A DNA stretch of 64,000 nt. Origin: Polymyxa betae A26-41. Taxonomy: Eukaryota; Protista; Endomyxa: Phytomyxea. Below are positions 5,922 to 53,857 of this stretch, piece after piece. Below the pieces are notes generated by a model that saw only the letters and a list, made by a program, of their open reading frames with translations, searched no databases and was not told the DNA's origin. A program made the translations under genes and the position numbers. How positions within the stretch are numbered: position 1 is the stretch's first letter; every line of letters starts with the position of its first letter. The stretch covers positions 1 to 64,000 of the forward strand of contig RBZT01000499.1 of NCBI GenBank assembly GCA_003693705.1. Reading direction: 5' to 3'.

Positions 5922-8900
5922 GAGCTGCATCACCGGATCGGAGCGTTACTGCCTGCTGGAGATAACGACCGTCCTCTGTTCGCGCAGATGTAGATTTACT
6001 ACGCCGAACAGCAGGATTCGATCCGGGGCCAAATGTATTGACCCAATTGTCGATGCAGGAAGCGCGGCGCCCTGCACGTTCCGACCATGTCCGCGATCGC
6101 CTGGACATATGCCATTCAGATCGGGACCGTTATGGCACGCAACAACCCGTTCGCAAGGTCGTTTTACCATGCCGGGCAACTTCTCCAGCAGGCCGTCGCT
6201 CGCGGTGAGCCAGTCCCCGATGCTCGGTTCGTTCGTGGCATATTCAACTTGCCGACCGCTCAGGAGATCGCCGTGATTCTGCCGGGTGCTGGCGACGCCC
6301 ATGAACCCACTGAGCAAAACATCCGTGTCCGTGTCCGATCAGCGGGACTGCGACGCATCTCCCACCTGCACCAAACGTAAACTCCGTTGCAGTTCCCGTT
6401 CTGATGTTCCCCTGTGGTGACTTCGGAGACTATTTGGGAATTCCGCGCGCTTGTTGTGGTTTGGGCGGCCGGTTGACGCCGAGAGTTTGCTCCAGAGAAC
6501 CGAGAACGAGGCGATTATGACGCCGCGATTGATTCCGCCGACAGCCCTGATGACGCTGTTGACGAGGTTGCTGATCGTGATGACAATCGACGTGGCCCAC
6601 GTCAGAACGTTACTCCATTGCAGTATTTCAGGTTGTTAAATTTTGATTCGCATTTTAGGGTTTTCTGACCATGTGTGTGTGTGTTTTAGGTACTGTCTGA
6701 TGGTCCGTCCTGACAATTACATTCTGCAGTTCGGCCGGTTATTTGACCAAAGGCTGCTGGATGCTTATTTTACGATGGAGACCTGCCGATTCAACTTTCA
6801 CCGCCAGAACCAGTCCGTTCTCCGCTAGGGTTCCGATCGGTACCGGTAGTACCGGCTACCGAAGCACATAAAGACTGAAAGTCTCAGAACAAAACCCAAA
6901 TTTCATTATAACACTTCATCTGTCATTTCAATACTTTAAATCTCATTCCCCAAATATCAGTGCACTTGAAATTTCTTCTTTGAGTCGATGACTGTGAAGA
7001 CCAATAAAATCACGACCGCAGTTCATAATCATTTTCACTGAGACCGATGAATCTGGGTTAGAGAGTATCTTTCCCAACTTCATTAAAACCCGATTGGATC
7101 GACCTGAGTGCCGTCGCAAGGAAGGCTGAGATATTTATCAAATTTGTCCATGTCCTCACCGTTTGAGAAGCAAAGAGGATGGTCCCCTCTGTCTCTGTTG
7201 CTTATCTGATCATAAACAGTCCCCTTGGGTTTATCGGGTGTTGAACAATTTCCATTTGAACTGATTTCAGCATTTTTGGGGTCAATCTCGGTTCCAGATG
7301 CTGAATCAGGTGATGATACGTTTGACACAAGGCTACTGCCGGAGCTTTCACTTAACACTATGGGCTCGTAATCATTCACGACAGGATCGAAAACTCCAAT
7401 CCTTAGATTGGCGCGAAGGAAAGGTGCATTTACGGGGCACAGTGGAGCGTTAGCCGTTCGCTTCCGTGAATGAAGCAAGATTTCAAGAAGGGTTTCAAAG
7501 TCCGACACGCAGATTTTCCAGCACTCACTATTCCTAGGCGGGTAGTGTCGGTAGTCGGGTCGGGTACCACCCATCTACCGGTATCCGACCGGGAGACTAC
7601 CGGAGCGCCGGTCGTCGGGTACTACCGGTATCGATCGGAACCCTATTCTCCGCACCCACACGTATCAAGGCGTTTACGACCAGATCCGTGCTGGCGAAGG
7701 CAACCTCGAAGATGTCATGCAGCGCATCATCCTGCCTTCAACTTTCATTGGTTCGCCGTGGGATCAGTTCCAACAGTACCAGGATGCGATGGCGATCGTG
7801 ATCGAGTACTTACGGGAAACTGGATTTGCTTGTCACCTACACCTGCAATCCCGGCTGGGAGGAGATTCGGCGAGAGCTGTTACCCGGACAAGAGGCGCGT
7901 GATCGTCCCGACCTCTTCTGTCGAGTGTTCGATCAGCGTCGAGTGGCGTTCCTGCATTTGACCAAGAAGCGAATCCTTGGCCGTGTCGTGGCCTTCGTCG
8001 CCGTGGTCGAGTTCCAGAAGCGTGGTCTGCCGCACATGCACGCGATTCTATGGCTTCAAAACGAGGACAAGTTCCGCACGCTCCAGGACGTCGACGCGAT
8101 ATTTTCTGCGGAACTGCCCGACCCCGATCGCGACCCGGACCTGAACGCGACTGTCTTACGGACCATGTTGCACCGATATTCCAGCCGATACCAACCGGAG
8201 CCCGATGCCCCCTGCAGGTACGGCTACCCGAAGCCGTTGGTGGACGAGACTCTCGCAGTCCAAGGCACCTTTCCCAGGTATCGTCGACGCGATCTCGGCC
8301 GCACTGTCGTTGATCGGAATGGTGGTGTGCTCACCAATCGGCATGTGGTTCCGTACAATCCCTATATCTCCAGGGTTGAGGACACCAATGTCAATGTCGA
8401 ATGCTGCTTCTCCATCGGCTCCGTCAAGTACCTGTTTAAGTAAGTCCACAAGGGCCACGATCGCGCAACGTTCGCCCTTGACGTGGGCGGCCCTTTCGAC
8501 GTTCCAGATCGCGCCGGCCATCGGGTTCGTGGAACTGCTGCTGTAATCGGCGATGCGCCTGCTGTTGCGGTCTTGCGGACGACGGCCAAGAATCGGCCCC
8601 TTCTGTTGTGAATGAGATCGACGATTTCGTTGACGGTCGCTATGTGTCCTCGAGGGAGTCAGCGTATCGCCTGTCTGGCTTTCGTCTCCGATGGCGCTCA
8701 CCCAACGTCCTGCGGCTGCCGGTGCAACTCGACGGGCAGCAACGCGTGTTGTTCGATCCTGCAGATCCCCGTTCCGTGGAGCGCATCGTTCAAGGTGCTC
8801 CGCCGGAAACCAAGCGGACGGCGTTCTTCCGGCTCTGCGACGGTACCCCGCAAGCTCGCGTGTTCTTCTACCACGAGGTGCCGCGGATTATTCGTTCAGG

Positions 8901-9902
8901 GACGGCCTTTGGGTTCGCAGAATTCCGACAGCGGGCGCAGCCTTCTATTTCACGTTTGGCGTTCGTCGACCCGCGCAATTCGGAGTTGTTCCATTTGCGT
9001 CTACTGCTGCTGTCCTTGCCCGCGCCGCATTCGTACTATCAATTGCGCACCTTCCGCGACGTGCTACATCCGACCTTTAGGGAAGCGTGTCTGGCGCGCG
9101 ATCTGCTCCACTGCGACCGCGAGTGGGGAGCGTTGCCTATCGGAGGCTGCCACGTTCCAGATGCCGACCCAGATTCGCCGACTGTTCGCCCGCCTCTTGG
9201 TGTACTGCAACCCGGTACGGCCTGATGTCCTCTTCAACACGTTCCTCACTAAGATCTCCGAGGACATCAGCCGCCGCCGACAACGTCGCTTGCTGTTGGT
9301 ACCTCCTGCTGCACCAATTCCGGACCGGACCGACCAGTACTACGTCCTGGTGATCCTCGACCGCATTCTCGTGTTGCTGGGGTCTTCCCTGAACGCGTTC
9401 CCATCCCTGCCAATACGATCGTTCCAAGATCAAGACCACGGCGACGTGGTGGTTCCTGACCACGCCGACGAGTTGATCGAACAGCTGCTGGCTTCGCAGG
9501 ACGTTGCTGCTGATCCGTTAGCCTGTATTGACCGACACGAACGCAACTTCGATCCAGATCTTGAACGCCGATCAACGACATGCTTACGACGCGATCCTGG
9601 CCGCCATTAACGACGCAGACCTCGCTCCCGCCAGCGTCACGGACTCGCACCTCTACTTCCTCCTCGGTCCGGCCGGCACCGGCAAGACGTTCACCATCAA
9701 CACGATTATCGGCGCGATTCGCTCCAGCGGACGCATTGCGATCGTGAGTTCGTCGTCCGGCATCCCGGCGCTGCTGCTGCATGGCGGTCGTACGGCACAT
9801 TCCACATTCATGATCCTAGTCAGCAACCTGCACGGCGATTGTGTCTATGCGCTGCCCCTCGACTACGACATAGCGGCCCAGATTCGCGACTCGCATCGAT
9901 AA
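5922..9902 (+). pseudogene. Decayed Helitron Rep/helicase (RepHel) gene, truncated at both ends and interrupted by a hAT element
   Basis: ELHHRIGALLP..PLFAQM*IY, NNPFARSF, RIILPSTFIGSP..YQDAMAIV, TCNPGWEEI..DRPD, HUH motif VEFQKRGLPHMH, KYLFK*VHKG, DGRYVSSRESAYR, PIF1 Walker A GPAGTGKT and [14 protein letters not shown]. Several frameshifts and stops; intron 6632-6689. Confidence 0.93.
6826..7645 (-). mobile_element. Internally deleted non-autonomous hAT transposon (820 bp) nested in the Helitron
   Basis: 28-bp TIR TAGGGTTCCGATCG[G/A]TACCGGTAGTACC; perfect 8-bp TSD TTCTCCGC (6818-6825 and 7646-7653). The minus strand keeps a degenerate hAT C-terminal dimerisation domain (DKYLSLP..DPIGF / ILSNPDSSVSVKMIMNCGRDFIGLHSHRLKEE). 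Confidence 0.95.
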
Positions 9903-10187
9903 TATGCCAGTTCGCATCCGAATCGGCAAGAACATTAGTGTGGAGCAGCCCCTCTTGTTTTGGCAAAGAGCGACCTGCTTAACTTAACCATCATACATCT
10001 TCGGGACTTGGAGTGGCTCTATAACATCGACCTGGGTGAGCAGAATGTAAATTGATTTTTTTCAAGCAAAATATTGATATCATGCAGGCCCTCCGCCGAT
10101 TGCAGGTCGCCGGGCGGCAATTCAATTAACGTTATTTCATCTCATAATCCCAAAGTTTCATTCGTCTTTGAGAAAGTATTAAACTAT

Positions 10188-22972: not shown

Positions 22973-25020
22973 ATGCATAATAGTTATGGCGTGTGTCATC
23001 ATTATATCTTTCATTCAATGTCAGATACAGATTTGATCTTGACATCATTATGTCAATGTCAACTGCATAATCAATATTCAGTGGAGGTCCAACATCTCAC
23101 ATTAATATTACTACAGGTTATTCACATCTTGATATTTGACATGAATTGTTCAACGTTATGGATAGAGTTCGGAATCTGTCATCGCATTAAGATCTCAACA
23201 GTTTACTGTCCAACGATGGCAAATATCTGTGAAGAATGCGGCTAAGTTTATATCTGATCGAATTTACGATCAGAAACCAACTGTTTCTCCTGATGAATTT
23301 ATGACAAAATTTGCAGCTGTTGCTCGATTTCCAAATCATGAACATAAAGCTGATGATGATATATGTGCTATACTGAATGCATACAGGAGATCAGAAAGTA
23401 ATCCAGATCCATGTCGTATAGATAGGGAGATATGTCGAATTCTGGCAGCATCAAACCCAGTTGAGAAATCACCTTTACATCATGATGTTATCAATAGAAT
23501 ATTACAACAACTATTCAACCAGTTACGTTTGTAGTAAACAAATTTCATGGTCTCGTAATCATTCTGCTCTATCAGGTATCAATTTTCACTCGGTGATTTA
23601 TTCCGGATTACAGAGCACAGTAAAGTGTTAGCATTATATCACGGTGATGGTCTCAAGATCAATGAATATCTTGCTGATGACAACCTCTCAATACTGCTTT
23701 ATGGTTCCATTAAAGTGTTCGACTCAATTGAAATTGGTGAACTACATCCACCAGAGATATTTAATATGAAGTCGTTAAACCTAGATGATGACAAATATGC
23801 AAAGTTGATATGCGATAGAGGTAGCACCGGTCTTTGATTACAGCCAATGTTGATTTACGTATAATCTTCTGTAGATTGTATCATGTTGATTATTACTTTA
23901 TCTGATTATCAACGTATATTTGGTGACAAACACTTCAATTCTATTGTACATCGAAGGAATCTGATCAATCAAAATCTAATCTTCAGGCAAATCTCTAATT
24001 CTGCATTAACAGTGATCTCATTGTCTTCGTCGTGCTACCATATTGACAGCAATCAAGTTAGAATACGATCTCGCTGTTACAATCAACTTCTTATAATTGG
24101 TTCAGGTAATCATCGAGCAAGGACAGCCAATAGCGAACAAGATATTCGTGATTGGGTCTGGTGTAGTTCGTATGATTATTGAACTTCCAGCAGATATAGC
24201 TGAAGCTCATAGAGCAAGTACATGCAGACCTCGATTGAAGCCCAGATCTTGCAATACTGCAATGAACAGATCACATCTTCAACTGTTACCTCCAACATTA
24301 TCCAGTCAACAAAATTCAGCTTTAAACTTACCTATACGAGGTGCCCTTGTATTCACACAACGACATCGTGAACCTCTTCGTACTATGATACATTCCACCA
24401 AGAACATTCAGAAGGGCGTCTTCGTAGAAATCGCTCAACTTACATCTGGAGATATATTTGGTGAAGAATCACTTCTGATCTCGGTTGATCAACATACACC
24501 AGAGCCATTTCAGATCTCAGTTTTATCAAGCTCAGGACCTGTATGGTTGATCACCATCCCCAAACATGTCCTAATTCGGCATCTCCCTGCCAGCATAATC
24601 TCCCGATTAACATCATTAATGAAGAATAATATCACACGACGTCAAATATTGTTTCATCTGGAGGAATGTGAACGATGGAAAACGTACTGCAGCAATCTAC
24701 CAAAGAACCCTCTACAAATCTTTACAGAGAGCCCAGCATGTAATGTCGGAATATCTTCACTTTTCAAGCATAGATTCTGGGCTCATCGTCATACTGACTT
24801 TCAAGAGCTTGTTCAGTGTGATGAATCTGTACAAGCTCGAGCCAGATTGCTCAAGGAACGAATTGCGTTCATTATCGATTCAATAGAAATCCGCACCGAC
24901 ACAGAGGCCTCAATATCAAGCCTTGAGGATCTCTCAGATGCAGAAATCGAGAAAAGGAGAGCAGAATTTAGTATCGAAAATATTGCAGAACTACTGTTAG
25001 AACCACATGATAATACATAG
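22973..25020 (+). CDS. Cyclic-nucleotide-binding (cNMP) domain protein, multi-exon (start uncertain)
   Basis: VIIEQGQPIANKIFVIGSGVVRM and VEIAQLTSGDIFGEESLL cNMP-fold motifs, with a degenerate first domain (LSILLYGSIKVF). Confidence 0.75.
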
Positions 25021-31822: not shown

Positions 31823-34800
31823 ATGATGTCGTCTTCTGGATTATCGCGAGAATTTTCGGCTCTAGTCCGATCGATTGGCGAATCGAAATCTAAAGGCGAA
31901 GAAGATACAATCATTAGCGCCGAGCTTGTCAAACTAAAGAATACGATGTGTGGCCGTGGTCCTGAGGTATCGTCTCATCAAATGAAAGAGTATCTTTTGC
32001 GAATGTTATATGCAGAGATGCTCGGTCATGATGCTTCGTTTGGCCATATTGCAGCTGTAAAACTTTGTTCATCTGCACGAAATTTATCCTGCAAACGTGT
32101 TGCATATCTCGCCGTTTCTGCCTGCTTATCTCCCTCAAGCGATCTTCTGTTACTTCTGGTTAACACATTGCAAACTGATTTACAATCGGCGAATCAATTG
32201 GAAGTGCAAATGGCTCTTCAGTTGGTCTGTAGACTAATGTCTGGAGATCTTGTACCTCCATTGATACAGCCAATATTAAAAGCTGCCTCACATATGCAGG
32301 CAGCAGTTCGAAAGAAAGCCGCTATCACTTTATGGCGCTGTTGCCAGATTGCTCCTGAAGTCGCCATCGCCAATGAGGTCCCATTACGCTTGAAATCGAT
32401 GCTTTGTGATAAGGATCCATCTGTTATGGGCGCCACGCTGCCTGCTTTACTTGAGCTGGACAATGTAAGAGATTTGTGCCCTTCCATTGTCAGCATTTTG
32501 AAGCAAATTGTCGAGCATCGCCTGGCGCGTGATTATGATTATCGGCGTATTCCAGCTCCTTGGATTCAGATTAAATTGATCCAACTAATTGCAAAAATTG
32601 CTGGCAATGATAAGATAATGAGCCAGTCGTGTTATGAAGTGCTTCATGAAGTAATTAGGAGAGCTGATACAGGCATTAATATCGGTTATGCTGTGATTTA
32701 TGAATGTATTCGAACGATCTGTGCTATATATCCTAATTCTGGGCTTCTTGATGAGGCTGCCAAGCAAGTCTCAAGGTTTATTAGCAGTGAATATCATAAT
32801 CGAAAATACCTCGGTATTGATGCACTAGCATCATTGGTTAAGGTCGAACCGCGTTATGCTTTAGACCATCAGCTTGTCGTGATCGATTGTCTCGATAGTC
32901 CCGATCAGACATTACGTCGCAAGACATTGGATTTGCTCTATCGGATGACAGGGCCTCATAATGTCACTGTTATCGTTGATGCCATGATGAAATTTATCAC
33001 TTCTCCCAACTCAGACAAATTTCTACGAAAAGAGCTCGTGTCTCGGATATCATCTCTGACTGAAAAGTTCGCCCCCGATATGCTGTGGTATATGGACGTT
33101 TTTAATCAGCTGCTGTCTATCGCCGGTGATTTAATTCCTTATTCATCAATTCATTCAGTTTTCAAGTTGATATCTTCTGATTCTGCTGTGGATCAGCGCG
33201 ACGAAATTATAACGAGGTATGATGCTCGGCTACATGAGATTGCTTGTGATGACGAAGGAGTAACTCCGATAATGGTTCAAGTTATTGCTTGGATTTTAGG
33301 CGAATTTGCCGATCCGGATCAGGACAAAACCGTGCTTCAAGATTTGTGTGATATCTTACCTAAAATTCGGAAGCCCATTACGCAATCCTACATTCTTGCA
33401 GCTTTAACGAAGCTGATTTGCCGCCTCAAAGTACGTCCTGTACCAAGAACAGTGCTGGAGGCTGCAGATCGCTATCAGCGCTCAGTGTCGGTAGATTTGC
33501 AGCAAAGATGCTCGGAGCTATTTGCTATAAGCCAGGTAATGCTTCCTCTTTGAAAGTCTAGGCCTTAGTAATTGTCTTAGATGGATCCTGCCATCATGGC
33601 GAACGTGCTGCCACCTATGCAGTCTTTCGGTGGAGTTGAAATCGATCCCATGTTACCATTCTTGAATGGTTAGAGGCATTTGCTCTATGTTTCAAGGATC
33701 TTATATTCTCGCCTTTAGATTATGTTGCTTCCTCGCTTCGTGAGGGCTCTCATCCATATAATCGTCCAGAGAACGTGTCGATCTCGGAACCTACTGTTCC
33801 CGACAGGTACATTTTGGGAGTTATGATGTATTTTTCTATCTCACTGGATTACTCTATAGTCACCTCAAATATACTCCCTATGCCTCTACCTCCGCTCCAA
33901 TCTTCAAGAAAGCAGAACAAAGGGAAAGTCCCCAAATTCCTACTATCGAACCAGTTCAAATAGAGGCAGTACAGCAATCAACAACTGGGCTCAGATTAAC
34001 TGGAGTTACTCGGAAGTGGGGCCCATCCGGTTATGGAGTCGTTCCTGCTAATAAAGCCTCTCAATCACCGAAATCGGAATCTGCTGCCGTATCTAAAGCG
34101 CCCCAGTTAAATCAGACCACTTCTTCTATTTCCAACTCTACAACATCGGCCCCCGGAGCAGTCCCAAGACGATCGGTGAGTTGCTTGTATTTACTGTAAA
34201 CGGGTGTCTGATCGATTGTAGTCATCTAATGACTCGATGAAAGAGAAGGAAGCTCGCGCTGCACTATTGTTTGGCGGTACAAGCAAGAGCTCTGCCCCTC
34301 CAGCCGCTGCTTCTTCTAACGTATCACTACCATCTGCTCGTAAGATGGCAAGTACATCAACCCCGGCACGTTTACCTGTAGCTGCTCAATCACCAGCTAT
34401 TGATGACCTACTTGACATTGCTTCACTGACCAGCCCAAATTCAGCAGCTGCTGCCGCTTCTCAGCCCGCTTTCCCCACCCCGAACGATCCTCTGTATATG
34501 CTTTTATAACTTCTCGAACAAGCTGAACTTACTGCTGTTTAGTACAGATTTACTGTTCTCGCTTGACCCAACCGTGTTTCCTGCGGCTTCTGATTCATTG
34601 AAAACTGCTAATTTTCAAATTCCCGCCTATCAGCTATGCTCATCATTTGTTAACTCTCCCTTCGCCACACTTGCTCGCTCTTCGGATGATGATGTTCTAC
34701 TTTCACATAACGATATGCTGTGTGCTAGTGCATTTACTGTATGTGAACATTGATTTGCTATGACTAGTTTAACAGGTGTCACAGTTATTCAACGAGGATT

Positions 34801-49151: not shown

Positions 49152-49551
49152 AAAAGTCCAAATCTATGTCGAAGCTCCACTTTTTGTTTCCAGGTTCCGT
49201 CAATCAGAAAACGTATTGTGTACATAGGTTGGGAATACCGGTATGTTGGCTATGCTTCTGTACATGCGAAACGCGTGTCGCGTCTTCGTCGTCACTAATC
49301 GGACCCTTGCGGGAATTATTGTCTCTGCAGATTTCTATCTGTAAAGGCACCGCATTGAGGAAAGACAAAACGCAACGACAGCAACTGTTGAAACAGATAT
49401 TCAGTCACAGGAGGACGTTTTGTTAATGAATTGTCTTTGCAGGCATGAATCTAGGTGCAATATCGTAGGTAAGGAATATCGTTACGAATTGTGTTATTCG
49501 ACCGAACTCTTATACGGATTTAAAGCGTCGCGCGTTGTTTAGCCTGTAGCT

Positions 49552-52500
49552 ATGAATTCTACCCAAGAACAACGCCGTCATTCGGCTACCGATACAGACG
49601 CCATCAGCCCAGCGTTCGAGGCAAATATTGACAATAAGGGATCGCTGCCAACTGTCAATTGTGCTTTCTGTGCCAAACAGCGCGCTCAGGGAAGGGCCTT
49701 CGCACGATGCCCACATCATTTTTATCCTTCGGTTTCCAGTCCAAATACAAACCTCAAAGACAGAAAACGAAAGGCAGTTAAGAGAGTTAATTCTAAATGT
49801 TCGGCTTGCTAAAGTTTCTCAATTTTATAGAACAAGCTACAAAGGCTGCAATTCTCTAAGTCTCACGCTAATCTACAAGAGCAAGAATTACGAGCTAGGC
49901 AAATGGAGAGCCTGTTTGCTTCTGCTGCTAAAGGAGACCTCGAAACAATCGAATGGTTGATGCTGAGTGGTGTCGATGTCTGGCAGCAAGATGAGGTACC
50001 ATTTCAATTTCTGCTTTAGCCGCAGCCAACAAAAGTTGGATTTAGGAGAAACGAAACATTCTTCATTTAGCATCAGCCCATGGAAGAACTCGTGTAGTCG
50101 AGTTTCTGGTATCTCAAAATGGAGATGTCAATTGTCAAGATATTTGGGGATATACGCCGTTAACTTGTGCTTTAAACAATGGTCATTTCGCGTTGGCTGA
50201 TTATTTATCTGCAAACGGCGCTAAACGTCTCAATCTTGGGTCTTGCCTTAGTCTCAGTTCAACTCTTTGCTCATTGGCAGCCCAAGGTGAACTAGGTATG
50301 TGTCAAGTCTGTGTCTGCTTTACCAACGCTTAACGTATATGGCAAAGATGAACTGAAAACTCTGGCAGAAAAAGGGGCGGATTTATCGCTTTCTGATTAT
50401 GATAAAAGGTTTCCATCAATGTTCATGTTCTAGATCTTTATTGGCAATGACATTCTGGTTTCTAGGACGCCGCTCCATTTAGCTTGCTCAGAAGGGCATG
50501 TACACGTCTGCAAATATTTGATCGAAGAGGTCAACGTTCCTACAAATTGCATTGATCGATTTGGGAATACACCTTTACAAGCAGCAATTGATAATCACCA
50601 TAAAATGATTGCTTCGTTAGTGCCTTATTTGGGCTTGAACGACACTATCTAACCTTCATCTAGATATCTGCAAGCGCATGGTGGAATCACCAGCGATCGT
50701 CATGGCACTATGCTGCTATACAATCTGCTCTCTGCTTGTGCCTCGGGCGATTTGTCAGCCGTTGTGAAAATGGTCGAAAGCGACGCTGTTAATGTCAATT
50801 TGACCGATTACGATGGACGATCTCCTCTACACTTGGCTGCTGGAAATGGTACATGCCAACATTTTTTATTCGATTCTTCTAATGCAAAGATTTAGGTCAT
50901 GGCAATATTGTCGCTTATTTGCTAGAGCATGGTGCTGCCACTGATGTATACGATAGGTTCAACAGCTTCAAAATCAGAATCAATGGTTAACCTTGCCTCA
51001 GGTGGGGTGCCGATCCTTATCACGAAGCAACCAAAAACGGTTTCCGTGAAGTTATTGAAATTCTAGACCCAGAAAATCGATGCTCAATGAAGCAATCCAG
51101 CCCGTTAGATGATGATATGGATTCACAAGGTGCAGGCTCTTCCCTTGACTGCTGTCATCGATTTGGGCGCAGGCGAGATATTGGTATGATGCGCCTGGCA
51201 TGTCTATGCATTTCCATCTCATTCCAAATTAGTTCATGAAGCTCTGCAACAAGCTTTAGAACAAGTATGTTCGTCGCTATCATGGATATATGGAGAAATC
51301 TGGATCCCCAATCGACATCATGTAGCTCTGCAAAATTGTAGTGATGTGTTTTATATCTCTCCACAAGTGGATGACAGATTCCGCGACCAACTCACTCAAT
51401 TTCGGTCATGCAATCGATCACTTCTTGTCGAATCATCGGTATTCTTTGGAGGTGTTCCAATACGAAACGGTTAGCATGCGTCACTGGTTATATCGAAACT
51501 TCTGATTCGAGCTTTTTAGGCAAATCTATATGGATGGAGGATCTCGATCCCATAGCACAATCGGTTTATTTTTCATGCCCAATGGCTCGAGCTGCTGGAT
51601 TACGGTCTGGTTTGATACTTCCCATTCGCCATGAGAATCAAAACCAGTATAGTTTCGCATACGCTATAGTAATGGTCTGGTGCATTTCATTCTTACTTTA
51701 TCGAATTTACATTCATCTCCAGAGGCAAGATGCGTTCCAGAAGTCAGATGGCGCGCAACAAGCAGCGGAAGAAATGTTCTCTATAATGTCGTCGTTGCTG
51801 ATTTCCAGCGTACTATTGCAAGGCGACAAGGTGATATATAGATCGCTCGGTTCATGTTGCAAACTCTTAATGTATATTTAGGTGTCTAGGGTGGAATATC
51901 TTGAAACGATTGAAAAGTTCTTAAATCAAACTGTAAATATTAAAGAAGACACTCCGGCACATATCTCTGAATGTGCATTCAGGATGCTTTGGAGGCTAGA
52001 CAAGCTGAATCTAATTTACTGAATTTCACTATAAGATTACTGTTTAAGCTGAAAATCGTTGATCAGTTCATTGAATGGGGTGAGTCGATGTTAAGCGAAG
52101 ATCATAAAGCGGCAATGGTTTTGCTTTTGTGGCTCGTCAAGCACATCCATCTATGTGGCGAGGTTGCAACTCGGCTGAATTCTGTATTTCGGTTTCTCTA
52201 TACAGTTTCACCATTACTGGTATTCGCCATACCAATGGTCTTAGATTAACTGTCTCAGTTTATCATCAGGAGCACGAAAGTCCAATCCGAGCTCAAGCTG
52301 ACACTGCATTGGATGACTTACGAGCAGCTGGTTTTGAGCCTGGAAAAATGCCCTTTTTTGGACATGGATTTCCTCGTAGTCCAGTATTCTCTCATATACA
52401 GATGCTCAGAAACCATTTAGGTTCAGCTGGTCGCTGGATTTCGACTAGGGTTTACTGAATGTCTTTAGATGAGGAATATAGGCGATATAAGCACAGAGCA

Positions 52501-53295
52501 ATGCTTGATGAAATGATGCCAGGCGTTATTGACAGGTATCTCATAATATGAATTGCTATCAATTGCATTTAACCGAGCTCATACTCCAGGCAAATACTTT
52601 CTTTCTCTCCTGGAGAGATATTTGATGCCTGTGGTTCACATCAGAGTATGCCAAATACTCCAAAAACGATAGGCGGCTTCTATTTTGGTGCTTCATCATC
52701 CACAGCAGTTTGTTCATAAGCCGATTTAAGACTGCTAGATTTTGATTTGCCTATCGGTTTAGGGAGCAAATGAAGCAGATCAGCTCTCAGAGCTTTGCAC
52801 TTCTATGTTGCAAACGTTGCCAACGAACGAGCTGGTCACATCGTCATCATTGCTCGATCTACACAAATGTCTAAGATTAGAACCTGGTGTAACAAGTGGA
52901 GAACTTCGGACTGGGCTGGTCGTGGGCTCTCACATGTTCTATAAATTCTATCGGGTCTTTGCTCCTGCCGATGAAGTATATACTTAAGTCTATTGAAACA
53001 AAGACTATGTCATTGATGCTTGAGTTAGGTTCCCGAGCTAATTCGAGAATTAGAAGAGGAACTGAGAGCGCCGTCTTCTCGGATGGCGCCTGCTATCCAT
53101 GCCTATTACGTATTTGCTATAATAGTATGTTATATTCATCCATTCGAGGATGGGAACGGTCGTATTGGTCGTGTTCTTGGCAACATGATATTAAAATCTT
53201 ATGGATATCCAGCCGTTTTCAGATCCAATCACAAAGTCATGACATTTGACGAATTCTTGAATCTGATTGTACAAGAGAAGTATGGTTCGCCTTAA
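49552..53295 (+). CDS. Ankyrin-repeat + GAF + Fic-domain protein (putative AMPylase), many exons; start uncertain
   Basis: ANK: DIWGYTPL, DYDK|RTPLHLACSEGH, DRFGNTPL, DYDGRSPLHLAAGNG. GAF: ALEQVCSSLSWIYGEIWIP..MARAAGLRSGLILPI. Fic: GELRTG..IHPFEDGNGRIGR (53137-53172). The frame is continuous across GT-AG introns read by eye. Confidence 0.85.
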
Positions 53296-53403
53296 CAGCC
53301 GTATATTAAGGCTCTGATGTATCATGATAATGTAAATATATATCTATTATGCACCTATTAACCAAATCGAATGCTCCAGTATCGACATGAATTCTCGCGA
53401 TAA

Positions 53404-53857
53404 TTAGCGATCGCATGCAACAATCTTCAACATATCACAATGGATCGATTCTAAATCCATTCGGATCTGATTCATCATAGTCAATAAGAGCCTTGTTATC
53501 ACATGCAAGTAATCATACAAGAGCATTTTCAATATAGAATGTCCACACGTTATCACATGACCGATAAAAATGCAGTCCTCCTGTTAATGACACTTTGGTA
53601 TCAACATCTTCTCTTAGAGCCCGATTTACACACTATAGCGATACAGTTTAGAAAGAGCATCTGGAAAAAGTCTGCTAACGTGCCCTGTCGAACTCCTGTA
53701 GAATCTTCACAGCTGTGTCACTATCTATCCGATCCAGATCGACCATCTCTTGCAGCGAATCTTTCAGAGTCTCGCCCAACGTTGAATTGCGATAAAGAAC
53801 ATAGGAACTGGAGGAGGTGGAGGAAGACGACCCTTTACTTGCACTGGTTTTACTCAT
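53404..53857 (-). CDS. TOA2: Transcription initiation factor IIA gamma (small) subunit, 3 exons
   Basis: YVLYRNSTLGETLKDSLQEM..AVKILQEFDR|CVNRAL..GLHFYRSCDNVWTF..LKIVACD. Confidence 0.93.

What the first reader, a model, noticed from the sequence alone, without database searches (positions are those of the whole stretch)
49552..53295. Ankyrin-GAF-Fic protein: candidate ligand-gated eukaryotic AMPylase unlike HYPE/FICD
Seen: one spliced frame runs from an N-terminal CAFC..CPHH motif through about 6 ankyrin repeats, a GAF domain (~51233-51680: ALQQALEQVCSSLSWIYGEIWIP..QFRSCN..KSIWMED..MARAAGLRSGLILPI) and a helical linker to a Fic domain. The Fic domain has the complete motif HPFEDGNGRIGR, including the catalytic His and final Arg. 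Known: HxFx[D/E]GNGRxxR marks AMP transferases; animal FICD/HYPE is TM-TPR-Fic with an inhibitory (S/T)xxxE(G/N) helix; this GAF pattern resembles cyanobacterial sensor GAFs and plant NLP-type GAFs. I saw no signal peptide, TM segment or obvious inhibitory motif. Inference: a cytosolic one-component system in which GAF senses a ligand, ANK binds a target and Fic writes AMP, possibly assembled from bacterial domains and since intronised.
Basis: partly seen in the sequence, partly recalled or inferred. Interest (0 to 1): 0.85.

Follow-up and report, generated by a model that had tools for sequence, protein, structure and literature searches.

The report
Ankyrin-GAF-Fic enzyme of plasmodiophorids
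This is a real, single, 18-exon gene of a plasmodiophorid protist (most likely Polymyxa betae) that joins ankyrin repeats, a GAF sensor-type domain and a complete Fic (AMP-transferase) domain; the family is conserved in a few microbial eukaryotes and nobody has studied it.

Summary
On the + strand, 49552-53295, eighteen exons separated by seventeen 45-57-nt GT..AG introns give one ~963-codon frame. Pfam confirms ankyrin repeats and a Fic domain with the complete motif HPFEDGNGRIGR. The middle domain misses Pfam's GAF cut-offs. It is nonetheless homologous to cyanobacterial sensor GAF domains, and in the closest ortholog it folds as a canonical GAF (pLDDT 87.9; Z 15.9 to solved GAFs). Full-length orthologs occur in Plasmodiophora brassicae, in a close relative and in environmental eukaryotes. 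The close relative's contig carries an uninterrupted 966-codon ORF and looks like a transcript. Nine P. brassicae introns sit at the same positions as here, so this is an old resident eukaryotic gene. I found no signal peptide, no membrane segment and no canonical inhibitory [ST]xxxE[GN] helix. A conserved ~200-residue helical extension carries an invariant SxxSE[D/E]HK element; in the model this element bridges to the unusually long, invariant Fic flap. Only one Fic locus was found in the genome. Best reading: a cytosolic, regulated AMPylase. Ligand gating by the GAF domain is plausible but unproven. It is a new variant of a known enzyme kind, uncharacterised and of moderate interest. I obtained no RNA reads for this genome, and I never submitted the joined protein to any tool.

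The parts
49552..53295 (+). Whole coding region, 18 exons. E1 49552-49785; E2 49831-49995; E3 50046-50295; E4 50348-50408; E5 50466-50615; E6 50664-50848; E7 50896-50956; E8 51002-51183; E9 51233-51469; E10 51520-51674 (alternative end 51668); E11 51723-51830; E12 51882-51932; E13 51983-52219; E14 52270-52420; E15 52469-52535; E16 52590-52707; E17 52763-52975; E18 53029-53295.
   Evidence: All introns are GT..AG and 45-57 nt long, and the frame stays continuous. Each exon aligns in order to ortholog P0022, covering residues 1-966. The window's introns appear as gaps against the intron-free contig L005.
49660..49719 (+). N-terminal C-x2-C-x12-C-x-H-H motif, possibly a small zinc-binding knuckle
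   Evidence: The Cys/His pattern is conserved in P0022, P0004, P0023 and P0024. No Pfam family matches it. Metal binding is inferred only.
49903..51077 (+). Ankyrin repeat region, about 9 repeat units over exons 2-8
   Evidence: Pfam Ank/Ank_2/Ank_4 hits with E 1e-12 to 1e-6 on exon pieces. Orthologs score Ank_2 at E 1e-46 in three stretches.
51150..51830 (+). GAF-type domain: the CCxRFGxRR lead-in at the end of exon 8, then exons 9, 10 and 11
   Evidence: Exon 9 hits cyanobacterial sensor proteins (best E 3e-11) in segments that are Pfam GAF_2 at E 7.6e-24. The AlphaFold model of the ortholog's domain has pLDDT 87.9. It gives 398 Foldseek hits to solved GAF-type structures and VIA Z up to 15.9 with rmsd 2.7 A over 160 residues.
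51882..52707 (+). Conserved helical extension of the Fic domain (exons 12-16); family-specific motifs FLxTVSPL, SP[IV]R and P[YF]FGxGxxxSPV
   Evidence: Invariant columns in the family alignments. It is modelled as one confident body with the Fic core (pLDDT 87.6, pTM 0.86).
52085..52108 (+). Invariant S-x-x-S-E-[D/E]-H-K element (here SMLSEDHK)
   Evidence: S54, E55, H57 and K58 are invariant in six family members. In the model, the residue just before it (53) and flap residue 272 are the only two beta-bridge residues.
52763..53292 (+). Fic core (exons 17-18)
   Evidence: Pfam PF02661 at E 6.8e-10. hhalign of the family against bacterial Fic proteins gives probability 99.4%, E 5.5e-22. FICD matches at Z 14.7, rmsd 3.5-4.2 A over 183-195 residues.
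52919..52966 (+). Extended, invariant flap region VVGSHMFYKFYRVFAP
   Evidence: It is about 7 residues longer than the FICD flap in the HMMER alignment. Its columns are invariant across the family.
53137..53172 (+). Fic catalytic motif HPFEDGNGRIGR
   Evidence: Read directly from the sequence. It is invariant in all complete family members.

Best explanation
The locus encodes one soluble protein of about 963 residues, probably cytosolic or nuclear. Its domain order is: small Cys/His motif, about nine ankyrin repeats, a GAF domain, a conserved helical extension, and a catalytically complete Fic domain. It belongs to an uncharacterised eukaryotic family found in plasmodiophorids and some environmental microbial eukaryotes. 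Shown here: the gene structure, the domain identities and folds, the complete HxFx[D/E]GNGRxxR motif, the absence of the canonical inhibitory glutamate helix, and the conservation of the family. Inferred: the Fic domain transfers AMP from ATP to a hydroxyl side chain of a conserved target, which the long invariant flap and the ankyrin repeats would hold. Also inferred: activity is controlled in cis by the N-terminal modules rather than by a classical [ST]xxxE[GN] helix. The most likely control is the invariant SxxSE[D/E]HK element sitting on the flap, with the GAF domain shifting that arrangement on binding a small molecule or a partner.
For: Gene model and single ORF. Contig L005 from a close relative carries an uninterrupted 966-codon ORF, with this window's introns absent. 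Nine intron positions are shared with P. brassicae. Ankyrin and Fic Pfam hits are above cut-off. GAF: sequence homology to cyanobacterial GAF_2 domains and a confident GAF fold. Fic fold and the FICD-like core. No TM segment or signal peptide. No canonical inhibitory motif at the aligned position. Invariant SE[D/E]HK element and flap, with the single beta-bridge 53-272 in the model. The GAF domain against the C-terminal module in complex prediction gave weak support: score 0.34, best control 0.02. Only one Fic locus was found in the genome.
Against: There is no biochemical evidence of AMP transfer, and a canonical motif does not fix the nucleotide or the direction (FICD also de-AMPylates). No ligand is known for this GAF subtype, and its nearest solved structures by identity are peptide-binding plant domains. 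The bridge between the SE[D/E]HK element and the flap rests on a secondary-structure string from a predicted model of an ortholog; I had no coordinates. The complex test is only weak support. I obtained no RNA reads from this organism. The folds were computed on the ortholog P0022 (about 56-89% identical per exon), not on the window protein.
Confidence: 0.6

Rival explanations
1. Same gene and same enzyme, but the GAF domain is not a small-molecule sensor. It would serve as a protein-protein or dimerisation module, as the related plant bHLH-MYC_N domains do, and it would scaffold the enzyme together with the ankyrin repeats. Fic activity would then be constitutive or controlled by partners.
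For: The highest sequence identity and lowest rmsd among solved matches belong to EGL3/MYC3 N-terminal domains (15-17% identity, rmsd 2.3-2.5 A, Z 13.8-14.5), and EGL3 is the top Foldseek hit. Sub-threshold Pfam hits include bHLH-MYC_N. The family replaces the GLPGRVW motif of the cyanobacterial relatives with FFxGxPIRxGK.
Against: The nearest sequence relatives sit in cyanobacterial multi-sensor kinases and cyclases, where GAF domains are usually input sensors. NreA, a nitrate-binding GAF, is also among the top structural hits. A Trp and a Cys are conserved between the family and the cyanobacterial relatives.
Confidence: 0.3
2. The Fic domain mainly does something other than AMPylation: de-AMPylation, or transfer of another group such as UMP, GMP or phosphocholine.
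For: FICD, the closest solved relative by sequence, is bifunctional. Fic enzymes with near-canonical motifs use other nucleotides (general knowledge of the family).
Against: The motif is fully canonical, GNGR..R, unlike AnkX or Doc. De-AMPylation by FICD depends on the inhibitory Glu, which is missing here at the aligned place.
Confidence: 0.1
3. It is a host-directed effector that the parasite delivers into plant cells, as many plasmodiophorid ankyrin-repeat proteins are proposed to be.
For: The organism is an intracellular plant-root parasite (PMC6328671). Bacterial Fic and ankyrin proteins are often effectors (PMC4454073).
Against: There is no signal peptide or hydrophobic N-terminus. Related full-length genes sit on compact eukaryotic contigs from environmental metagenomes, next to housekeeping genes. 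The gene is single-copy and its sequence and introns are conserved across plasmodiophorids.
Confidence: 0.06
4. The gene model is an artefact: two adjacent genes (ANK-GAF and Fic), or contaminant DNA in a binned assembly.
For: The assembly was produced by metagenomic binning. I had no RNA reads for this organism.
Against: Independent full-length ORFs or models with the same domain order exist in at least six other sources. Spliceosomal introns are shared with a chromosome-scale P. brassicae contig. The neighbouring genes are eukaryotic.
Confidence: 0.03

Closest known systems
FICD/HYPE (animal ER AMPylase/de-AMPylase of BiP)
   Same: It is eukaryotic, has a complete HxFx[D/E]GNGRxxR motif and a Fic core preceded by a helical region. 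It is the best solved relative by sequence profile (E 2.4e-15) and is tied for best by structure (Z 14.7).
   Different: This protein has no TM anchor, no Pfam-detectable TPR and no TVAIEN-type inhibitory helix at the aligned position. Its flap is about 7 residues longer. It adds ankyrin repeats and a GAF domain, and its helical extension carries its own invariant motifs.
Class II bacterial Fic proteins (e.g. SoFic, BT_2513)
   Same: The core fold and motif match (hhalign probability 99.4%; Z 13-13.5).
   Different: The bacterial N-terminal inhibitory motif (consensus NSNxIEGNTLT) has no counterpart. At the matching distance upstream of alpha1 the family has a short helix with invariant F and G but no conserved Glu.
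AnkX (Legionella Fic-ankyrin phosphocholine transferase)
   Same: It is a Fic domain combined with ankyrin repeats in one polypeptide.
   Different: The order is reversed: AnkX has Fic first, then the ankyrin repeats. From general knowledge, the AnkX motif deviates from GNGR..R and it has a CMP-binding insert. The structural match is weaker (Z 9.2-9.4). AnkX is bacterial and secreted.
Cyanobacterial multi-sensor histidine kinases and adenylate cyclases with the W-x-YGE-x-W type of GAF; plant NLP GAF and bHLH-MYC_N domains
   Same: The GAF domain is homologous along its whole length to the cyanobacterial domains. It gives sub-threshold Pfam hits to GAF_2, GAF_NLP and bHLH-MYC_N and shares the fold.
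   Different: The output domain here is Fic, not a kinase, cyclase or DNA-binding domain. The GLPGRVW motif is replaced. The ligand is unknown in all of these.

Membership tests
Fic/Fido (Pfam PF02661) | Profile match above the curated cut-off | tested here: met
   40.1 bits against a cut-off of 24 on window 53029-53292. The genome-wide scan finds this single locus.
Fic/Fido (Pfam PF02661) | Complete catalytic motif HxFx[D/E]GNGRxxR | tested here: met
   HPFEDGNGRIGR at 53137-53172. It is invariant in the family.
Fic/Fido (Pfam PF02661) | Fic fold with a flap before alpha3 | tested here: met
   The ortholog model (pLDDT 87.6) matches FICD at Z 14.7 and other Fic structures at Z 13-14.4. The flap is present but longer.
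Fic/Fido (Pfam PF02661) | His-dependent nucleotidyl transfer | not testable with these tools
   Needs an enzyme assay.
FICD/HYPE | N-terminal membrane anchor | tested here: not met
   The highest 19-residue hydropathy is 1.5, inside folded helices. The N-terminus is hydrophilic.
FICD/HYPE | Two TPR motifs before the Fic domain | tested here: inconclusive
   No Pfam TPR hit in the window pieces or the orthologs. The helical extension does overlay FICD residues 104-186, but only at rmsd about 12 A.
FICD/HYPE and class II Fic | Inhibitory helix [ST]xxxE[GN] just upstream of alpha1 | tested here: not met
   A regex search finds no conserved instance there. The aligned region lacks a conserved Glu. 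hhalign does not extend over it. A variant, [ST]xxSE[DE], exists about 260 residues upstream of the catalytic His.
GAF domain (Pfam clan) | Pfam GAF-family hit above the curated cut-off | tested here: not met
   Only sub-threshold hits: GAF_2 in 4 of 5 members (best E 4.4e-5), GAF_NLP in 4 of 5 (best E 7e-4). None on single window exons.
GAF domain (Pfam clan) | Homology to bona fide GAF domains | tested here: met
   Window exon 9 matches P0008 residues 180-232 (E 2.5e-6, whole library). That stretch lies inside a Pfam GAF_2 domain, residues 175-317, E 7.6e-24. The alignment runs the full domain length.
GAF domain (Pfam clan) | GAF fold (six-stranded antiparallel sheet flanked by helices) | tested here: met
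   The model has the order H-E-E-H-E-H-E-H-E-E-H, pLDDT 87.9. It gives 398 Foldseek matches at E<=1e-3 and Z 15.9, rmsd 2.7 A over 160 residues. This was done on ortholog P0022.
GAF domain (Pfam clan) | Binds a small-molecule ligand | not testable with these tools
   No coordinates or ligand data were available.
Ankyrin repeats | Pfam Ank families above cut-off, in tandem | tested here: met
   for the window exons; for the orthologs.
AnkX-type phosphocholine transferase | Deviant Fic motif, CMP-binding insert and Fic-then-ANK order | tested here: not met
   The motif here is canonical and the order is ANK-then-Fic. The structural match is weaker (Z 9.2-9.4). AnkX's own features are recalled from general knowledge and PMC4454073.

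The most novel reading that the evidence does not exclude
A new mode of Fic control. The canonical inhibitory glutamate helix has been lost. In its place, an invariant SxxSE[D/E]HK element from a family-specific helical extension docks on the enlarged flap, acting as a pseudosubstrate, a self-AMPylation site or a surrogate inhibitory Glu. The adjacent cyanobacterial-type GAF domain releases it on binding a metabolite. That would make this the first ligand-gated eukaryotic AMPylase and the only Fic enzyme of plasmodiophorids.
Probability: 0.2. Interest if true: 0.75.

Novelty: new variant of a known kind. Interest (0 to 1): 0.55.

Why it matters
Eukaryotic Fic biology is essentially the biology of one ER enzyme, FICD. 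A second, soluble eukaryotic Fic lineage would widen the known regulatory repertoire of AMPylation. It has its own sensor-type domain, a target-binding repeat array, no classical autoinhibitory glutamate and a family-specific element on the flap. It would also give a tractable model for input-controlled Fic activity. It appears to be the sole Fic gene in Polymyxa betae, the vector of sugar-beet rhizomania viruses, and it is conserved in the clubroot agent. Its target may therefore bear on plasmodiophorid cell biology. Public annotation currently sees only 'ankyrin/Fido' and misses the GAF domain.

Tried and rejected
No reads were laid, read laying was not used, and there is no direct RNA evidence for this organism.
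2. Pfam on single exons does not see the GAF domain.
3. PDB sequence searches with the GAF exon or the family profile gave only spurious weak hits (herpesvirus gL, ribosomal uS7). Exon 17 alone gave nothing.
4. Alternative splice choices rejected on ortholog alignment. An intron at 52080-52141 would remove the invariant SEDHK block. The donor at 52646 gives stops or a 130-nt intron. The donor at 51669 was replaced by 51675, because both orthologs keep two more residues and the P. brassicae intron then coincides exactly.
5. A canonical [ST]xxxE[GN] motif was searched by regex and by alignment to bacterial class II Fic proteins. None is conserved at the expected place.
6. No paralog of the GAF exon or the Fic domain was found in the genome.
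7. A family-specific pattern scan of 185,579 bacterial and archaeal species genomes found no relative. The scan is pattern-limited.
8. An SSU rRNA search of the genome gave no usable hit. The organism was identified from assembly statistics instead.
9. Literature searches for Fic+GAF, Fic+ankyrin in eukaryotes and Fic in Plasmodiophora found no description of this family.
10. Earlier scan notes held nothing relevant.
11. The joined spliced protein was never sent to any search or fold tool. Exons were used by reference, and orthologs P0022 and P0004 served as full-length proxies.
Full report
**Organism and setting.** The window is contig C574 of a genome with 27,085,814 bases in 1,001 contigs. 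The Polymyxa betae draft genome was announced as 1,001 contigs and 27,085,946 bp (PMC6328671). The window is therefore most likely from that plasmodiophorid, a plant-root endoparasite and virus vector. Its neighbours are ordinary eukaryotic genes: adaptin, ZPR1, a DnaJ/CCCH protein, an RRM protein, G-alpha, a dual-specificity phosphatase, cofilin, and a convergent TFIIA-gamma just downstream.

**Gene model.** Reading 49480-53420 and the three forward frames gives eighteen exons from ATG 49552 to TAA 53293-95. Seventeen GT..AG introns of 45-57 nt separate them. The frame is continuous, at 2,892 nt or about 963 codons. Splice choices were checked against orthologs found later:
- Every exon aligns in order and without gaps to the 966-aa protein P0022, covering residues 1-966, at about 56-89% identity per exon.
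- Ortholog alignment rejected two alternative splice choices and moved the exon-10 donor from 51669 to 51675.

Exons were searched by reference, and database orthologs served as full-length proxies.

**Single-transcript question.** Indirect evidence is good.
- P0022 is encoded on a 3,621-nt Logan contig (L005) as one uninterrupted 2,901-nt ORF.
- L005 is about 70% identical to the window at the DNA level. The window's introns appear as gaps against it.
- The convergent TFIIA-gamma gene on L005 is also intron-free, although it is interrupted in the window.
- The simplest reading is an assembled transcript from a close relative. In that case ANK, GAF and Fic lie on one mRNA there.
- Gene callers or ORFs give the same full-length order in Plasmodiophora brassicae (P0004, 947 aa, on a 1.28-Mb contig). 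The same holds for four environmental contigs (P0023, P0024, L008 ORF 847-3816, P0098).

**Age of the gene.**
- The annotated P. brassicae gene has ten introns.
- Nine coincide within one residue with window introns 3, 6, 7, 8, 9, 10, 13, 14 and 17.
- The tenth is probably an annotation error. Reading through it is in frame and stop-free, and it restores the last GAF helix seen in the window and in P0022.
- The gene was therefore present, with these introns, before these plasmodiophorids diverged. It is neither contamination nor a recent transfer.
- The environmental members are intron-free. They lie on compact eukaryotic contigs beside chitin synthase, Vps23/UEV, Yju2, Bap31, a SUN-domain protein and protein kinases.
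- A C-terminal-module-only relative (P0026) comes from a EukProt transcriptome labelled Colp12.

**Ankyrin and N-terminus.**
- Pfam Ank families pass their cut-offs on three exon pieces. Orthologs show three Ank_2 stretches. By eye there are about nine repeat units rather than six.
- The C-x2-C-x12-C-x-H-H motif (49660-49719) is conserved in four members but matches no Pfam family.
- No 19-residue window is hydrophobic enough for a membrane helix, and the N-terminus is hydrophilic.

**The GAF domain.**
- Single exons gave no Pfam hit.
- An exhaustive HMMER search with exon 9 (78 aa) against 1.84 billion representatives found 21 proteins at E<=1e-3.
- Among the hits are P0004 (45% identity over the whole exon, at the same relative position) and large multi-sensor histidine kinases and adenylate cyclases.
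- Where those carry names, they are cyanobacterial: Spirulina subsalsa, Lusitaniella coriacea, Drouetiella, Microcoleus, Symplocastrum.
- In P0008 the matched stretch lies inside a Pfam GAF_2 domain with E 7.6e-24. The alignment runs the full domain length with shared W-x-YGE-x-W, Cys, Ala and Pro positions.
- Family members individually give sub-threshold hits to GAF_2 (4 of 5, best E 4.4e-5), GAF_NLP (4 of 5) and bHLH-MYC_N (3 of 5).
- An AlphaFold2 model of P0022 residues 419-603, built with a 20-sequence alignment, has pLDDT 87.9 and pTM 0.85 with canonical GAF topology.
- Foldseek finds 398 solved structures at E<=1e-3. All 50 rows shown are GAF-type, including EGL3/MYC3 N-terminal domains, NreA, PtsP-GAF, DosS and cyanobacteriochromes.
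- VIA-align gives Z up to 15.9, rmsd 2.7 A over 160 residues, covering the whole domain.
- The domain is a GAF. Its ligand, if any, is unknown. The closest solved structures by identity are peptide-binding plant domains, which keeps a non-sensor role open.

**The Fic module.**
- Exon 18 passes Pfam Fic and carries HPFEDGNGRIGR at 53137-53172.
- A four-member profile of the C-terminal ~370 residues finds FICD as the best solved relative (E 2.4e-15), followed by BT_2513, C. elegans FIC-1 and IbpA.
- Profile-profile comparison with 36 bacterial Fic proteins gives probability 99.4% and E 5.5e-22. It covers only alpha1 to the motif.
- The AlphaFold2 model of P0022 residues 600-966 is confident (pLDDT 87.6, pTM 0.86).
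- Its residues 147-367 overlay FICD at Z 14.7, rmsd 3.5-4.2 A over 183-195 residues. Several bacterial Fic proteins are tied within 1 Z. Atlas neighbours are generic Fic clusters.
- Outside the family, database relatives cover only the core. A family-pattern scan of bacterial and archaeal species genomes found none.

**Regulatory anatomy.**
- The bacterial class II inhibitory motif (consensus NSNxIEGNTLT in alignment A8) has no counterpart.
- At the matching distance upstream of alpha1, the family has a short helix with invariant Phe and Gly. The position before the Gly is Cys, Ala or Phe, not Glu.
- The ~200 residues between the GAF domain and the core are conserved and folded. They carry FLxTVSPL, SP[IV]R and P[YF]FGxGxxxSPV.
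- They also carry an invariant S-x-x-S-E-[D/E]-H-K element, in the window SMLSEDHK at 52085-52108. It preserves the [ST]xxxE spacing in most members.
- The flap (VVGSHMFYKFYRVFAP, 52919-52966) is invariant and about seven residues longer than FICD's.
- In the model's secondary-structure string, the only two beta residues are 53 and 272. Residue 53 comes immediately before the S-E of the element, and residue 272 lies in the flap. They must therefore pair.
- Fic flaps normally hold the target peptide by such backbone pairing (established knowledge of the family). The model therefore places the invariant Ser/Glu element where a substrate segment would sit. This suggests a pseudosubstrate, a self-modification site or a surrogate inhibitory Glu.
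- That is inference from a predicted ortholog model without coordinates.
- A complex test of the GAF domain against the C-terminal module gave weak support only: score 0.34, best control 0.02. Overall the mark was reached by 51 of 78 solved complexes and 2 of 108 mismatched pairs. At scores of 0.60 or under it was reached by only 5 of those 78 solved complexes and by all 4 mismatches that passed. The runs agree in at least 33% of contacts, and the partner pLDDT is at least 78.

**Comparison and novelty.**
- Only one Fic locus is detectable in the genome. No FICD-like gene was seen, and the GAF exon has no paralog.
- Public pipelines label the orthologs 'Fido domain-containing protein' or 'ankyrin repeat protein/fido' and do not annotate the GAF domain.
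- Full-text searches found no paper describing a GAF-Fic or ANK-GAF-Fic protein, or any Fic enzyme in plasmodiophorids.
- A 2015 survey noted sporadic, polyphyletic eukaryotic Fic groups (PMC4454073).
- I file this as a new variant of a known enzyme kind. It is a member of the Fic superfamily and the GAF fold class. It is not a member of FICD/HYPE, class II Fic or AnkX-type, because defining features of each were tested and not met.

**Verdict.** Ligand gating, the target and the chemistry remain inferences.

Noticed in passing
L004:7055-7117 (Plasmodiophora brassicae ortholog, GCA_900303365.2 OVEO01000010.1): The deposited gene model splices out a 63-nt in-frame, stop-free segment. Read through, it encodes the last helix of the GAF domain, homologous to window exon 11 and to P0022. 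The public protein (947 aa) is therefore probably 21 residues short.
   Followed up: partly
window 6000-10000 (ORF 7826-8443 +): A GC-rich island (52-59% GC against about 40% around it) holds a Helitron-like helicase N-terminal domain (Pfam E 8e-24) and overlapping long ORFs on both strands. It is probably a transposon.
   Followed up: partly
window 53404-53857 (- strand): A convergent TFIIA-gamma gene (Pfam TFIIA_gamma_N, E 7e-15) lies about 100-400 nt from the Fic gene's stop. The same convergent pair lies on the relative's contig L005, where the two genes appear merged into one transcript-like contig. That suggests overlapping 3' ends.
   Followed up: partly
L007:1-9390 and L008:1-5967: Two environmental contigs share the order NADP-oxidoreductase (-), ANK-GAF-Fic (+), chitin synthase (-), with intergenic gaps of a few to tens of bases. 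This points to a very compact, intron-poor eukaryotic genome of unknown lineage.
   Followed up: no
window 49552-53295 versus 31823-33553: Intron density differs sharply within the window. The Fic gene has 17 introns in 3.7 kb, while the adaptin gene has an uninterrupted 576-codon stretch.
   Followed up: no
window 24097-25020 (+): A long ORF gives a near-threshold cyclic-nucleotide-binding domain hit (26.0 bits against a cut-off of 27.5).
   Followed up: no
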